Below are positions 7,483 through 18,750 of a stretch of DNA of 64,000 bases, piece by piece. The position numbers and the translations under genes are program-made. The DNA lies in IMG/VR virus record IMGVR_UViG_3300032562_000003, positions 124,001-188,000 of that record. One strand, 5' to 3'. Position 1 is the first letter of the stretch. Every line of letters begins with the position of its first letter. The notes below the pieces were generated by a model. The model was not told the origin of the DNA. It was given only the letters and a program-made list of their open reading frames with translations, and made no database searches.

Positions 7483-7550
7483 GATAAATAAAGATGTAGT
7501 TCACGGTGCGCTAACACCCAACTACTCTAATGCTATAAGGAGCAATCAGC
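7483..7550 (+). promoter_or_regulatory. late promoter plus conserved two-hairpin leader, copy 1
   Basis: GATAAATA aagat GTAGTT cac GGTG cgctaa CACC c AACTAC tcta ATGCT ataaggagcaatc AGC-ATG. Confidence 0.85.
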
Positions 7551-8186
7551 ATGTGTATTTATTGCGGCACTACCAAATACCGTAGAATCTACGAACAACA
7601 CAACGGACCTATTCCAAAAGAAGAGAATGATCGATCATATGAAATCCATCACATAGACGGTGATCATTCAAATAATGACCCGATAAACTTGAAGTGTGTA
7701 ACTATTCAAGAACATTATGATATTCATTATTCTCAAGGTGACTACGGTGCTTGTTTTTTACTAGGTAAAAAACAAAAAGTTTCACCTGAAAAACTATCCG
7801 ATTTGAATAGGCTACAGAACTTAACCAGAATACAGAATAATACCCACAACTTGATCAAAAGGGCAGATGGTAGTTCACATGCGTCGGACAGGGTAAAAAA
7901 CGGAACTCATCATTTCTTAGACAAAGAAGCCGCAAGTCTCAGAGGAAAAAAACGAGTAGAAAACGGAACTCATCATTTCTTGAAACAAAACAGGTCACTT
8001 GCTTTTGTAGATAAAGTTAATCAACCTGTATATAAATGGAAACACGTAAAAACTGGTGAAATAGAAATTTTAACAGCAAAAGATTTCATGATCAAACATG
8101 ATTTATCAAAGTATCAAGGGAACATAAGTTGGTTAATAAGTGGTAAACATAAATCGGTTAAAGGTTGGATAGTAATACGAGATTGA
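7551..8186 (+). mobile_element. free-standing HNH homing endonuclease, antisense to the head operon
   Basis: EIHHIDGDHSNNDPINLKCVTIQEHYDIH HNH motif; C-terminal NUMOD1-like GNISWLISGKHKSVKGW. Confidence 0.85.
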
Positions 8187-8244
8187 CGAGTTTCTCCTAT
8201 ATAAATAGGACAAACGTCTCCTTCATATTCAGGTTTTACGATAA

Positions 8245-8478
8245 CTAGATGCTAGGTGCCCCGGCCGCAGCGTCAGGTTTAGCACCATACTGTTTACGTA
8301 ACTTTTCTAGGTACTGTTGCTTCTCGAATGTTCTTACATCCAGCATTCTACGAAGCTTTCGAATCTGTCTAAGCGTCAACTTAGTCTTGCGTGACGTTCT
8401 ATACACAGGTCTGCTGTTGTCAGAATTTACATCCTGTAGACCATTGACCGGCGGACTAAAAATATCTTCTAAAAGCAT
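8245..8478 (-). CDS. small basic protein downstream of portal (possible prohead core, gp68-like position)
   Basis: 77-aa ORF with SD gaggg and its own late promoter (8495-8502); RKTKLTLRQIRKLRR. Confidence 0.65.
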   Translation of the reverse strand: MLLEDIFSPPVNGLQDVNSDNSRPVYRTSRKTKLTLRQIRKLRRMLDVRTFEKQQYLEKLRKQYGAKPDAAAGAPSI

Positions 8479-8492
8479 GACACCCTCATCAA

Positions 8493-8517
8493 TATATTTA
8501 TCATTATGATAAATATA
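8493..8517. promoter_or_regulatory. back-to-back late promoters forming an 11-bp inverted repeat
   Basis: TATATTTATCA-tta-TGATAAATATA, with GATAAATA on the minus strand (8495-8502) and the plus strand (8508-8515). Confidence 0.75.
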
Positions 8518-8577
8518 AACGTAGTTCGCGGGTCAGCAAACCCCAACTACTCTAATGCTATCTTAGGAAACATCAGC
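8508..8577 (+). promoter_or_regulatory. late promoter plus conserved two-hairpin leader, copy 2
   Basis: GATAAATA taaac GTAGTT cgc GGGT cagcaa ACCC c AACTAC tcta ATGCT atcttaggaaacatc AGC-ATG. Confidence 0.85.
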
Positions 8578-9418
8578 ATGACTATTTATCTATACAAGAA
8601 AACCCATAACATAACTGGATTAAAATACTTAGGTAAAACCGCACAATCTAATCCATATAAGTATCCAGGATCCGGAAAAATGTAGAGGTCGCATATAAAA
8701 ACACATGGGTATGATGTTACTACTGAAATATTACGAGAGTGTCACTCTAAAGAAGAGGTAGCAGAATGGGGTTATACTACTCTAAACTGTGGAATATAGT
8801 AGACGAGCGGGATAAGAATGGGAAGAAAACGTGGGCTAATCTAAAGTTTGAAGAGGGCGACGGAGGTGCAACTGTTTTTGGTGACAGCCATCATTCTAAA
8901 ACTATTGAATTTAAAAATAGAATTGATCACGCATGGACTCCCGAAAAAAGAAAAAAACAAGGTGATCTGTCTCGATCACGATTTTCGCACATGTCTACTG
9001 AAGACAAAAAACATATAAGAAAAAAAGCAATCGACACTAGAACTAAAAATAACCCAGATTGGAGGAAAGACTTATCTGATAGAATGTTAGGGAAAACAAT
9101 CCTTCAAAATCTAAAGAAGTAATAGAAAAGATAGCAGAAAGTAAATCAAACTGGAATGACTCCTTTCGAGAATATGTAATCAGTAAAAATTCTGGAATTA
9201 ATCATTACAGAAACAACCCTAATTACAAATCAACTCAATTTGGAAAGGGGCACCCTAATTATAACCCCAATGTATACTCATTTAAAAATAAAAATACACT
9301 AGAAGAAGTTAGAATGACAGTGTTTGATTTTATAAAAACATACAACCTACATCAAGGAAATGTAAGTTTATTAATGTCTGGAAAAAGAAAATCTGTACGC
9401 GGGTGGATGTTATCTTAG
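8578..9418 (+). pseudogene. decayed GIY-YIG (Seg-like) homing endonuclease
   Basis: Starts MTIYLYKKTHNITGLKYLGKT, nearly identical to 17975..18682. TAG at 8683-8685 replaces the conserved Trp. Two 1-nt losses in G runs (8768-8771, 9090-9092). The third frame ends ...GNVSLLMSGKRKSVRGWMLS*. Confidence 0.85.
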
Positions 9419-16835: not shown

Positions 16836-16867
16836 ATAGAGAGAACTATTCATTTAATTCTCTCTAT
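16836..16867 (+). terminator. terminator-like hairpin after the gp51-like ORF
   Basis: ATAGAGAGAA/TTCTCTCTAT 10-bp stem, 6 nt after the stop; the U-tract is short. Confidence 0.55.
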
Positions 16868-16886
16868 TTCCATATCTACTTAGGTT

Positions 16887-17360
16887 AGAGTATCTTTTAG
16901 AGTTGTCCTTACGGACAACTTATATCTCACTACGTTCGATATATTCTTTTTAATTGTCTTAAAGAATACTCTCTAGGAGTTATACATGCCGGATTGGAAG
17001 CCATGGTAGTGCTATTCAGCACTACCAATGGTATTAGGGGCCATGCCATGGACCTTCCACCGTTGCTGTCTATCCCCCGTCAATCTAGCGTTTGTTGCTG
17101 ATTGACGCTACCGGTTGCACTGTAAAGTTTGCTAGGGCTGTAGTGAAGCTGACCACCCCTTAGGGGAAGTTCTTCTGCAACGCATGTTCTACACCTTCAA
17201 GACAGAATAGACGTGTAGACTCATTCAGGGTTCGCATTCTACCAAGCGAGAGCCCTGTCGGTATTCCCGAACATCATGGATTCCATGATGCTCAGCAGAC
17301 TCCAGATCCGCGCCATGATATCTCGCATGTCGCTCAAGGAGAGTCGAGGTACCCCGACCA
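16887..17360. ncRNA. candidate large structured ncRNA or replication origin
   Basis: No ORF of 60 aa or more; about 51% GC by hand count over 16981-17340; at least eight stems of 6-13 bp, some nested. Family and strand not identified. Confidence 0.45.
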
Positions 17361-17387
17361 AACGCCAATATAGGGTTCTGTGATTTT

Positions 17388-17960
17388 TTAGATTTGAATG
17401 GAGATAATGTTGTCGGACGTGGTGTCGGGTGAGCCAGAAGAATTATTTGTAGATGAGCCTGAATATGCTTTAAGAAGGTCTTTGTTGAGTTTAAAAAAGT
17501 TATCGAATTCTATGAACACCCAATCGCCGTGTTTAGCTGAGGTGTAAAGAATGAAGTTGTCAGTAACCCACGTGTACTTTGTTTGAACGGCGACAAAGCG
17601 TCCTTTTCTATTAATCTTAAACATCAATATGTTTAGATTGTCAGGGTCAGATACTTCCATTAACTGATCTAACCAAGACTCGACCACTTTGCAATCACCT
17701 GAGAGCAAAAGATGAAAAGGGAAAGTAGCATAGCTCTTGCATTCAGAGTTAAAATTTACCCAATCATCAGGCGCAATTATGTCTCCTTTGAAAGACTTAG
17801 TTTGATTTGCATCAAGTATGTTTTTGCGATGAGAATTAGATCGTCCGATATACGCGCCTGAATTGGGAACACGCACAAATGAAGCGGAATACAACGCTGA
17901 CAAGAAGGCCGCGACCTCCCGCTCAAATGAACTTCCTTTTGCTTTAGATTTAGAAGGCAT
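17388..17960 (-). CDS. Holliday junction resolvase, Hjc-like (PD-(D/E)xK)
   Basis: SKAKGSSFEREVA, RVPNSGA, GDII, ECKSY. Confidence 0.8.
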   Translation of the reverse strand: MPSKSKAKGSSFEREVAAFLSALYSASFVRVPNSGAYIGRSNSHRKNILDANQTKSFKGDIIAPDDWVNFNSECKSYATFPFHLLLSGDCKVVESWLDQLMEVSDPDNLNILMFKINRKGRFVAVQTKYTWVTDNFILYTSAKHGDWVFIEFDNFFKLNKDLLKAYSGSSTNNSSGSPDTTSDNIISIQI

Positions 17961-17974
17961 ATGATATTTATTGT

Positions 17975-18682
17975 CTATATACGGTTGTTTTTATTTTTAC
18001 ACTTATCTCCGTGATATTTCACAAAGTTGTGTCTAGCGCAGGTTTTACTGCAATGTTCACACGTCATGGGCGGAGATGTTTTGCCATACCTTGGACTATG
18101 TTCTCCGATTTTGCCGAACATAGGATTGTTGTGGCCTGAAAGCTTTTCTGATCGTTTTCGTTTAGACTCGTCAGTGTGTTTTTTACCGAGATGGGATCTT
18201 CTAACACGGTCCGCTATTGCAGGGTCTTTCATCGGATTGTTATCTCCGGATATATCATCTCGCTTCTGTCCAAACATGTGATTTCCGAAACCTTTCCTCT
18301 GCTCACTCAACTTTGGGTTAGTAACATCGGTTTTGGCAATGCTTATGTTTTCTTTGTGAGAATCTGTTAACTTAAATCCCGGTAATCTACCTCCTCCGTC
18401 ACTGGTTTCTGGTCTTAAATTAGCCCATGTTTTCTTTCCGTTGGCATCTTTTTCTTCAACCACGTTCCATAAATTACTATAATACAATCCCCGCTCTTTT
18501 AATTCTTTAGTTGTTTTGCATTCTGCTAGTATCTCAGTCGTAACATCATATCCGTGAGTTTTAATATGATCTTTCCAATAGTCACCTGAGCCTTTATATT
18601 TGTGCGGGTCTTTGGCTGTTGTTTTACCTAGGTATTTAAGACCGGTTATGTTGTGGGTCTTTTTATATAGATAAATATTCAT
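17975..18682 (-). mobile_element. free-standing GIY-YIG (Seg-like) homing endonuclease
   Basis: NIYLYKKTHNITGLKYLGKT...YKGSGDYW; NUMOD3-like HLGKKHTDESKRKRS; C-terminal CEHC...HGDKC. Confidence 0.85.
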
Positions 18683-18750
18683 TGCTGATTGCTCCTTCTA
18701 GCATTAGAGTGAGTGGGGATTCGTACTCCCGCGACTCACATCTATTTATC
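18683..18750 (-). promoter_or_regulatory. late promoter plus conserved two-hairpin leader, copy 3
   Basis: GATAAATA gat GTGAGT cgc GGGA gtacgaa TCCC c ACTCAC tcta ATGCT agaaggagcaatc AGCA-ATG. The promoter overlaps the gp46 TGA. Confidence 0.85.

What the first reader, a model, noticed from the sequence alone, without database searches (positions are those of the whole stretch)
7483..18750. A covarying two-hairpin RNA leader shared by three homing endonuclease genes of two unrelated families
Copies lie at 7483-7550 (+, HNH), 8508-8577 (+, GIY-YIG pseudogene) and 18683-18750 (-, GIY-YIG). SEEN: each has a late promoter GATAAATA, then 3-5 nt, then an outer stem that changes compensatorily (GTAGTT/AACTAC twice, GTGAGT/ACTCAC once). 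A fixed asymmetric internal loop (CRC opposite C) follows. The inner stem differs in all three copies yet stays paired (GGTG/CACC, GGGT/ACCC, GGGA/TCCC) and caps a variable 6-7 nt loop. An invariant TCTA linker leads to a second hairpin (A)TGCT...AGCA(T) enclosing the SD and reaching the start codon. KNOWN: T4 homing endonucleases such as I-TevI use RBS-occluding hairpins whose 5' arm is left out of late transcripts. INFERENCE: here the whole structure lies downstream of the late promoter, so it is not that mechanism. It looks like a portable expression cassette or protein-binding operator that nucleases of different folds have acquired. I do not recognise it as a named RNA family.
Basis: partly seen in the sequence, partly recalled or inferred. 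Interest (0 to 1): 0.85.

Follow-up and report, generated by a model that had tools for sequence, protein, structure and literature searches.

The report
Homing-nuclease leader cassette with antisense RNA
Three selfish nuclease genes in this jumbo phage share an 85-base start cassette, also found in hundreds of uncultured phage contigs, whose conserved two-hairpin fold fits the opposite strand better, so it probably encodes a small antisense RNA that restrains the nucleases.

Summary
The three copies are real: CM scores are 78-90 bits and the next-best hit in the window scores 13. The element is not private to this genome. Two pattern scans of IMG/VR each hit the 120-locus limit and gave 196 distinct copies. 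There is no match in Rfam, GenBank phages or the literature.

Hairpin 1 covaries strongly. The covarying partner is a proximal arm that overlaps the SD, closed by a basal helix.

The cassette runs into codons 2-4. TATTTA(T), the reverse complement of the late box ATAAATA, is kept in all three reading frames at a fixed distance.

It precedes at least 8 N-terminal families, mostly GIY-YIG and HNH nucleases.

The non-Watson-Crick pairs are A.C on the mRNA strand, which means G.U on the opposite strand. The same 19 pairs are 88.9% paired on the sense strand and 96.8% on the antisense strand. RNAalifold finds 10 pairs on sense and 19 on antisense.

Read on the antisense strand, the element is late box, N5, G, 5' hairpin, then a terminator-like hairpin with a U tract. 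That is a predicted RNA of about 65 nt covering the whole 5' UTR, in the manner of IS10 RNA-OUT.

No transcript has been observed. Confidence is about 0.5.

The parts
7483..7490 (+). Copy 1: sense late-promoter box GATAAATA; predicted sense start at G7496
   Evidence: The box matches the tGATAAATA found upstream of other late genes. T4-type geometry places the box at -13 to -6 (PMC1524935).
7496..7525 (+). Copy 1: hairpin 1 (outer stem 7496-7501/7520-7525, CAC, inner stem 7505-7508/7515-7518, bulged C7519)
7526..7550 (+). Copy 1: linker TCTA, hairpin 2 (TGCT 7531-7534 with AGCA 7541-7544, SD in loop and 3' arm) and CAGC 7547-7550; basal helix C7527-G7549 and T7528-A7548
7556..7562 (-). Copy 1: TATTTAT in codons 2-4 of the HNH gene, which reads ATAAATA on the minus strand (predicted antisense late box)
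7483..7550 (-). Copy 1: predicted antisense RNA (start G at 7550, 5' hairpin, terminator-like hairpin, U-rich tail 7495-7483)
   Evidence: -17.0 kcal/mol against -13.2 for the sense leader. Also.
7551..8186 (+). HNH_3 homing endonuclease gene (211 aa, starts MCIYCG)
8508..8589 (+). Copy 2: whole cassette (box 8508-8515, hairpin 1 8521-8550, TCTA 8551-8554, hairpin 2 region 8555-8573, CAGC 8574-8577, ATG 8578, TATTTAT 8583-8589)
   Evidence: 81.7 bits
8508..8577 (-). Copy 2: predicted antisense RNA. A separate minus-strand late box at 8501-8495 follows its U tract.
   Evidence: -20.2 kcal/mol, z -2.9
8578..9122 (+). Seg-like GIY-YIG pseudogene (in-frame TGA after codon 35, then a frameshift)
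   Evidence: tblastn with the copy-3 protein gives 69% identity over residues 1-65, with the remainder in another frame.
18671..18750 (-). Copy 3: whole cassette (box 18750-18743, 3-nt spacer, hairpin 1 18739-18709, TCTA 18708-18705, hairpin 2 18704-18688, CAGC 18687-18684, ATG 18682-18680, TATTTAT 18677-18671)
   Evidence: 77.6 bits
18683..18750 (+). Copy 3: predicted antisense RNA
   Evidence: -20.1 kcal/mol, z -2.4
17975..18682 (-). Seg-like GIY-YIG/NUMOD3 homing endonuclease gene (235 aa)
21890..22786 (-). gp55-like late sigma factor, the machinery that would read both boxes
   Evidence: phrog_12791 at 6e-75 and phrog_234 at 4e-22

Best explanation
The element is a composite start cassette for selfish nuclease genes in a clade of uncultured phages that use T4-type late transcription. 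It carries two convergent late promoters about 65 bp apart.

The sense box (G)ATAAATA starts the nuclease mRNA on the first base of hairpin 1.

The second box is the TATTTAT in codons 2-4, read on the other strand. It would start an RNA at the G opposite the last C of CAGC. That RNA consists of an 8-9 bp 5' hairpin whose loop is the anti-SD sequence CCUUU, then the complement of hairpin 1, then ACUUUUAUUUAU. The last two together look like an intrinsic terminator, and the U tract is the complement of the sense promoter.

The resulting antisense RNA of about 65 nt is complementary to the whole 5' UTR up to the start codon. It would pair with the nuclease mRNA, probably nucleating at the two SD/anti-SD loops. 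Pairing would block the ribosome and probably expose the duplex to RNase III. This would hold late nuclease expression low, the logic of IS10 RNA-IN/RNA-OUT.

Shown: the conservation, the covariation, the strand asymmetry, the promoter-box geometry and the presence of gp55.

Inferred: that either promoter fires, that the hairpin terminates transcription, and that pairing represses.
For: 1. The covarying fold fits the antisense strand better.
- For the same 19 pairs in the same 70 elements, 88.9% of cells are paired on sense and 96.8% on antisense.
- RNAalifold with no structure given finds only hairpin 1 on sense (10 pairs, -11.15 kcal/mol). On antisense it finds both hairpins (19 pairs, -17.3 kcal/mol).
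- Mean MFE is -12.6 on sense and -15.9 on antisense. The hairpin-2 region is more stable on antisense in 157 of 159 elements.
- In the three window copies the values are -13.2/-14.0/-13.8 on sense and -17.0/-20.2/-20.1 on antisense.

2. Non-Watson-Crick cells in the core stems are A.C on sense, which is G.U on antisense.
- Counts are 67 A.C against 12 G.U. The CAC loop variant adds another 25 A.C.
- By position and type there are 13 A.C classes against 2 G.U classes.

3. TATTTA is under nucleotide-level constraint.
- It is kept in all three reading frames relative to the start codon (116, 22 and 16 copies).
- It lies 5 nt from CAGC in 133 of 159 copies.
- It is kept across unrelated protein families.
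- The commonest departure from the heptamer, TACTTAT (9 copies), changes the amino acid (Ile to Thr) rather than being synonymous.

4. Both boxes have the T4 geometry of box, N5, G (sense 134/162, antisense 133/159). The T4 box sits at -13 to -6 (PMC1524935).

5. ATAAATA marks late genes in this genome. The genome encodes a gp55-like sigma. ATAAATA is the rarest of the 21 A5T2 heptamers inside long ORFs on both strands (47 and 43 occurrences, against medians of roughly 200 and 145). A conserved antisense copy inside coding sequence therefore stands out.

6. The spacer upstream of hairpin 1 can extend the stem by pairing with the linker in 81% of copies, against 54% for permuted spacers. These bases lie upstream of the sense start but inside the antisense RNA.

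7. In 25 of 87 divergent contexts, the neighbouring gene has its own box just beyond the U tract. This is consistent with termination there.

8. There is a precedent. The CfrI antisense RNA of cyanophage S-PM2 runs opposite a homing endonuclease gene (PMC2984593).
Against: - No transcript data exist. Promoter activity, termination and pairing are all inferred.
- The complement of any hairpin also folds, and the U tract is a by-product of the sense promoter. The independent evidence therefore rests on the wobble asymmetry and the TATTTA conservation.
- The wobble counts are not phylogenetically independent. The ACGCT class alone contributes about 35 cells.
- In hairpin 1's inner stem the asymmetry is absent (9 A.C against 11 G.U).
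- The terminator-like stem carries bulges, and 2 non-U bases precede the U tract. The simple terminator scan flagged only copy 2, and in a different register.
- The base before the antisense box shows no clear preference for the G seen at sense boxes.
Confidence: 0.5

Rival explanations
1. The element is an mRNA leader only. Hairpin 1 sits at the very 5' end of the late transcript and protects it from 5'-end-dependent decay. Weak hairpin 2 half-occludes the SD and throttles translation of a toxic nuclease. TATTTAT is kept for some mRNA-level reason, such as an AU-rich ribosome landing site or pairing with the promoter box in read-through RNA.
For: - The predicted late start falls on the first base of hairpin 1 in 134 of 162 copies.
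- The SD 3' half lies in the covarying stem.
- T4 uses RBS-occluding structures for I-TevI, mobE and segB (PMC3014915).
- The element always sits in front of an ORF in the sense orientation.
Against: - Sense hairpin 2 averages only -2.7 kcal/mol, and RNAalifold does not recover it.
- A.C mismatches are tolerated while G.U pairs are almost absent in the hairpin-1 outer stem and in hairpin 2. This is the opposite of what a sense fold predicts.
- Box:TATTTAT pairing has a mean probability of 0.23 and no flank covariation.
- An AU-rich landing site would not need an exact heptamer at a fixed distance in three reading frames.
Confidence: 0.22
2. The element is a bidirectional late-promoter cassette. 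The antisense box drives the neighbouring gene that the inverted nuclease insertion would otherwise cut off from its operon promoter. The hairpins are simply that mRNA's structured 5' UTR.
For: - The upstream neighbour is divergent in 87 cases and co-directional in 48.
- The nuclease gene is antisense to both neighbours in 52 cases and co-directional with both in 27.
- Copy 1 sits between the portal gene and the head-gene operon on the other strand, and no other minus-strand box lies upstream of 6530-7504.
Against: - TATTTAT is equally conserved when the upstream gene is co-directional (73% against 70%).
- The 5' UTR would be over 110 nt, whereas other late genes here have 15-60 nt.
- A hairpin plus U tract lies between the box and the neighbour.
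- 25 of 87 divergent neighbours have their own box just beyond it.
Confidence: 0.13
3. The element is a PeSL-like recombination or regulatory cassette, or a protein-binding operator. Its sequence would be conserved mainly because copies recombine (concerted evolution), or because a shared phage protein binds the invariant bulges and linker.
For: - There are at least 5 copies per genome in front of unrelated ORFs that share even their first four codons.
- PeSLs show that short promoter/stem-loop modules shuffle genes in T4-type phages (PMC4122927).
- The invariant bulges and the invariant G.U/A.C pair look like a recognition surface.
Against: - Recombination alone does not produce compensatory changes in 14 of 19 pairs.
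- PeSLs carry early sigma-70-type promoters and a terminator before the promoter. Here the box is a late one and lies before the hairpins on both strands.
- No candidate binding protein was identified.
Confidence: 0.15

Closest known systems
IS10/Tn10 RNA-IN / RNA-OUT antisense control of transposase (from my own knowledge: Simons & Kleckner 1983; not checked in the paper library)
   Same: Convergent promoters flank the 5' end of a selfish element's nuclease-type gene. A short, stable stem-loop antisense RNA of about 70 nt overlaps the RBS and start codon. The dose of antisense RNA rises with copy number.
   Different: Here the promoters are phage late (gp55-type) boxes. The antisense RNA has two hairpins and uses the complement of the sense promoter as its U tract. 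The cargo is homing endonucleases, not a transposase. Nothing has been shown experimentally.
T4-type RBS-sequestering hairpins of I-TevI, gene e, soc, 49, Aeh1 mobE and segB (PMC3014915)
   Same: A late promoter lies next to an RNA structure at the translation start of a homing endonuclease gene. The purpose is to keep the nuclease low or late.
   Different: In T4 the late start lies inside the hairpin, so late RNA lacks the 5' arm. Here both hairpins are downstream of the start, the SD stem is weak, and the fold is better on the other strand.
CfrI antisense RNA of cyanophage S-PM2 (Millard et al. 2010, as cited in PMC2984593)
   Same: An antisense RNA in a T4-like phage overlaps a homing endonuclease gene.
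   Different: CfrI is about 225 nt, links psbA to F-CphI, is known from one lineage and has no reported shared cassette. There is no sequence or Rfam-level similarity.
PeSL promoter-early/stem-loop cassettes of T4-like phages (PMC2839356, PMC4122927)
   Same: Short, repeated promoter-plus-stem-loop modules lie at the borders of accessory genes. They probably act as recombination points that shuffle cargo.
   Different: PeSLs combine a terminator with an early promoter and do not reach into the ORF. This element has late boxes on both strands, an SD and the first four codons.

Membership tests
T4 I-TevI/gene e type RBS-occluding hairpin | The late transcription start lies inside the inhibitory hairpin, so late RNA lacks its 5' arm | tested here: not met
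   The box ends 5 nt (134 copies) or 3 nt (24 copies) before hairpin 1. Both hairpins are therefore in the late RNA.
T4 I-TevI/gene e type RBS-occluding hairpin | Read-through RNA pairs upstream sequence with the SD/AUG region | tested here: inconclusive
   The box is complementary to TATTTAT 2-5 nt after the AUG. However, the mean pair probability is 0.23, it exceeds 0.5 in 21% of copies, and there is no covariation at the ends or flanks.
Cis-antisense control of the IS10 RNA-OUT kind | An outward-facing promoter inside the 5' end of the gene, convergent with the gene's own promoter | tested here: met
   Met by sequence only. ATAAATA lies on the opposite strand in codons 2-4, is kept in three reading frames, and sits 5 nt from a conserved G start. 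The heptamer is otherwise avoided in ORFs.
Cis-antisense control of the IS10 RNA-OUT kind | The antisense RNA forms a stable conserved stem-loop and overlaps the RBS and start | tested here: met
   19 consensus pairs, 96.8% of cells paired, 14 pairs covarying. The RNA spans +1 of the mRNA to the base before the AUG.
Cis-antisense control of the IS10 RNA-OUT kind | The antisense transcript exists and represses translation | not testable with these tools
   No transcript data and no isolate are available.
PeSL cassette | A stem-loop terminator followed by a sigma-70-type early promoter | tested here: not met
   The boxes are of the late type. There is no sigma-70 excess (30 sites against 28.4 expected). 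On each strand the order is promoter, then hairpins.
Any Rfam 15 family | A covariance-model match | tested here: not met
   No hits at gathering threshold in the window, and none at E<=1 in three loci holding five copies.
Intrinsic terminator (antisense strand) | A G+C-rich stem immediately followed by a U tract | tested here: inconclusive
   The hairpin 1 complement is followed by ACUUUUAUUUAU. The stem can extend 2-3 bp into the spacer in 81% of copies. The simple scan flagged only copy 2, and in another register.

The most novel reading that the evidence does not exclude
The cassette encodes a family of late-expressed small antisense RNAs that act in cis and also in trans. The linker, hairpin-2 and CAGC segments are nearly identical in all copies within a genome. 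Each RNA could therefore pair with every homing-nuclease mRNA, giving a genome-wide copy-number governor for selfish nucleases. This would also explain why the pseudogene copy keeps an intact element.
Probability: 0.2. Interest if true: 0.85.

Novelty: new variant of a known kind. Interest (0 to 1): 0.72.

Why it matters
Homing endonucleases are the main selfish elements of large phages. How their expression is restrained is known for only a few T4 genes, each with its own hairpin. This element is one conserved 85-base module, reused by many unrelated nucleases in hundreds of uncultured phage contigs, and it appears in no RNA database.

If the antisense reading holds, three things follow:
- It would be the first conserved antisense RNA family dedicated to homing nucleases.
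- It would be a compact example of one sequence serving as promoter on one strand and terminator tail on the other.
- It would offer a ready-made late-expression and repression module.

The case also carries a warning for motif discovery. Covariation alone does not tell which strand is folded; the G.U against A.C asymmetry does.

Tried and rejected
Rejected. Thirty-one ACGCT variants and other 5'-arm variants do not pair with the invariant AGCA. Proximal arms covary in more than 20 arm types.
- **tRNA-like minihelix reading of hairpin 1.** Copy 3's loop resembles a T loop. Dropped, because loops vary freely (4-7 nt with no conserved sequence).
- **Small self-cleaving ribozyme.** No Rfam hit at E<=1 and no conserved loop-linker complementarity.
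- **Long-range helix between the promoter box and TATTTAT in read-through RNA (I-TevI logic).** Weak: mean pair probability 0.23, box first base against last base not complementary (C boxes meet G in 1 of 16), flanks 54% complementary against 53% expected.
- **ATAAATA as a genome-wide enriched word.** Not enriched overall (20 against 23 expected). Its positions are almost all promoter-like, and it is depleted within ORFs.
- **GenBank phage isolates.** The 5-kb megablast query and the 83-nt blastn query both found nothing.
- **Literature.** Searches for the motif strings gave only chance hits.
- **My first generic regex.** It caught only 96 copies and was replaced by nhmmer plus the CM.
- **MAFFT alignment A3.** It misaligns hairpin 2, so the pair counts under-report it.

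
Full report
**1. What is in the window**

- Each has GATAAATA and then a 3-5 nt spacer.
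- A hairpin follows, with a 6-bp outer stem, CRC opposite a single C, and a 4-bp inner stem.
- After that come TCTA, a segment holding AAGGAG-like bases, CAGC(A) and the start codon.
- The three ORFs also share ATG-NNT-ATT-TAT.

A covariance model built later scores the copies at 90.2, 81.7 and 77.6 bits. Nothing else in the window scores above 13 bits.

The genes are as follows.
- 7551-8186 is an HNH_3 gene.
- 17975-18682 (-) is a Seg-like GIY-YIG/NUMOD3 gene.
- The gene behind copy 2 is a Seg-like pseudogene with an in-frame stop and a frameshift.

**2. The phage**

- The window has no near relative in GenBank phages.
- Its gp46-like protein is about 43% identical to those of jumbo phages such as PA5oct.
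- It carries T4-type head genes, gp46/47 and a gp55-like late sigma factor at 21890-22786.
- ATAAATA is not over-represented overall. Nearly every occurrence sits just upstream of a co-oriented gene, usually as tGATAAATA.
- Inside long ORFs of these contigs it is the rarest of the 21 heptamers of the same composition, on both strands.
- T4 late promoters are TATAAATA at -13 to -6, with a loose first base. CTAAATA is used by Aeh1 (PMC1524935).
- The box is therefore credibly this clade's late promoter, and the start is the sixth base after it.

**3. The element is widespread**

- A pattern built on the hairpin-2 region hit the 120-locus limit in IMG/VR. About nine-tenths of the hits carry hairpin 1 and the box.
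- A pattern built only on the commonest hairpin 1 hit the limit again. It gave 154 distinct copies, unbiased for what follows the hairpin.
- The window matches IMG/VR contig 3300032562_000003 (258,859 bp). The spacing and sequence of the copies are the same, and that contig holds at least five copies.
- nhmmer over all fetched DNA gave 196 distinct elements, of which 159 were parsed base by base.
- There is no match in Rfam, even at E<=1, none in GenBank phages and none in the paper library.
- Six hits lie in MAG bins, mostly Bacteroidota. This is only a weak hint about the host.

**4. Structure**

*Hairpin 1 is solid.*
- 97% of cells are paired, 9-12 pairs show double changes, 0 of 500 shuffles reach this, and slid controls give 17-56%.
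- The internal loop is CGC (134 copies) or CAC (25 copies) opposite C (159 copies).

- The 5' arm varies (CATT, GATT, TACT, TGTT, GCC and others).
- Its partner is a proximal arm that overlaps the 3' half of the SD, not the invariant AGCA before the AUG.
- The C of the linker covaries with the G of CAGC (C-G 153, U-A 5), which forms a basal helix.

**5. The cassette reaches into the ORF**

- CAGC is followed after 5 nt (133 of 159 copies) by TATTTA(T/C).
- The start codon slides within this frame, so TATTTA is read in all three frames (116, 22 and 16 copies).
- The commonest departure from the heptamer, TACTTAT (9 copies), replaces Ile with Thr, so it is not a synonymous change.
- The ORFs fall into at least 8 unrelated N-terminal families: several GIY-YIG types, HNH_3, an EKHHIIP-type HNH, and zinc-finger singletons. 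Most match homing-endonuclease PHROGs.
- These bases are therefore conserved as nucleotides, and TATTTAT is the reverse complement of the late box.

**6. Which strand folds**

Within the core stems, the non-Watson-Crick cells are almost all A.C on the mRNA strand. That makes them G.U on the other strand.

| Stem | A.C (sense) | G.U (sense) |
|---|---|---|
| Hairpin 1, outer | 16 | 0 |
| Hairpin 2 | 42 | 1 |
| Hairpin 1, inner | 9 | 11 |

- The CAC loop variant adds 25 more A.C cells.
- By position and type there are 13 A.C classes against 2 G.U classes.
- The invariant A of TCTA faces the first C of CAGC. On the other strand this is a G.U pair present in 70 of 70 elements.
- The same 19 pairs in the same 70 elements are 88.9% paired on sense and 96.8% on antisense.
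- RNAalifold, given no structure, recovers only hairpin 1 on sense (-11.15 kcal/mol). On antisense it recovers both hairpins (19 pairs, -17.3 kcal/mol).
- Energies agree, both across all elements and in the three window copies.

**7. Reading the antisense strand**

The order on the antisense strand is as follows.
- ATAAATA.
- Five bases.
- A conserved G.
- An 8-9 bp hairpin with loop CCUUUAU, which is the anti-SD sequence.
- One to two bases.
- The complement of hairpin 1, extendable by 2-3 bp into the spacer in 81% of copies against 54% for permuted spacers.
- A U-rich tail, which is the complement of the sense promoter.

That is the anatomy of a small RNA gene: promoter, 5' hairpin, terminator. 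The product is exactly complementary to the nuclease mRNA from +1 to the base before the AUG.

I therefore favour convergent late promoters producing a cis-antisense repressor, as in IS10 RNA-OUT (the IS10 comparison is from my own knowledge). Antisense transcription opposite a phage homing endonuclease gene has one precedent, CfrI of S-PM2 (PMC2984593).

**8. Caveats and rivals**

- No transcripts are available.
- Hairpin complements always fold, and the U tract comes free with the sense promoter.
- The wobble counts are not independent events.
- The terminator is imperfect.

*Sense-only leader.* This means a 5'-terminal protective hairpin plus weak SD occlusion. It remains possible, but it predicts the opposite wobble asymmetry.

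*Promoter for the divergent neighbour.* This fits the orientation bias: 87 divergent against 48 co-directional upstream genes, and 52 against 27 for both neighbours. It does not fit the equal conservation in co-directional contexts. It also does not fit the separate boxes just beyond the U tract in 25 of 87 cases.

*I-TevI-like long-range pairing.* Pairing of the box with TATTTAT is weak and does not covary.

*PeSL-type shuffling.* Shuffling (PMC4122927) probably explains how the cassette came to precede so many cargos. It does not explain the covariation.

**9. Verdict**

The second hairpin and the assignment of the fold to the mRNA need correcting. The most likely mechanism is antisense control, at about even odds. 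The element is a new, undescribed RNA motif of a known regulatory kind.

Noticed in passing
window 9415-12474 (-): The T4 gp20-like portal gene is interrupted by an intein (Pfam Intein_splicing at aa 359-740) carrying an HNH_3 nuclease at aa 510-535. This is yet another selfish nuclease in this head-gene region.
   Followed up: partly
window 2504-3283 (-), box 3311-3305: A fourth homing-type nuclease ORF starts MFKENKYTKHY. It belongs to the same NKYT/EKHHIIP HNH family that elsewhere carries the cassette. Here it has only a plain late box and SD, with no two-hairpin element. It also has a sense-oriented ATAAATA in codons 5-7.
   Followed up: partly
window 22875-22904: Two late boxes face each other 16 nt apart, between the gp55-like late sigma gene and a virion protein gene. 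The phage therefore uses convergent or overlapping late promoters elsewhere too.
   Followed up: no
window 35156-54049 (+): A single ORF of 6297 aa, preceded by a late box at 35092. It was not analysed.
   Followed up: no
window 17388-17960 (-): A PDDEXK_15 nuclease gene lies directly downstream of the Seg-like gene. It has its own late box at 17971-17965, only 4 nt before the ATG.
   Followed up: no
window 7468-7474 (+): A second ATAAATA lies 16 nt upstream of copy 1's box, giving tandem late boxes. No minus-strand box other than the antisense one lies upstream of the head-operon ORF 6530-7504.
   Followed up: no
all fetched loci (1.09 Mb of long ORFs): ATAAATA is the rarest of the 21 A5T2 heptamers inside ORFs on both strands (47 and 43 occurrences, against medians of roughly 200 and 145). 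This suggests selection against stray late promoters in this phage clade.
   Followed up: yes
L233-L238 (genome contigs): The element occurs on six contigs binned into MAGs. Five are Bacteroidota bins (Haliscomenobacter twice, Mucilaginibacter, Bacteroides and an unclassified Bacteroidetes) and one is Terrimicrobiaceae. These are probably co-binned phage contigs and give only a weak host hint.
   Followed up: no
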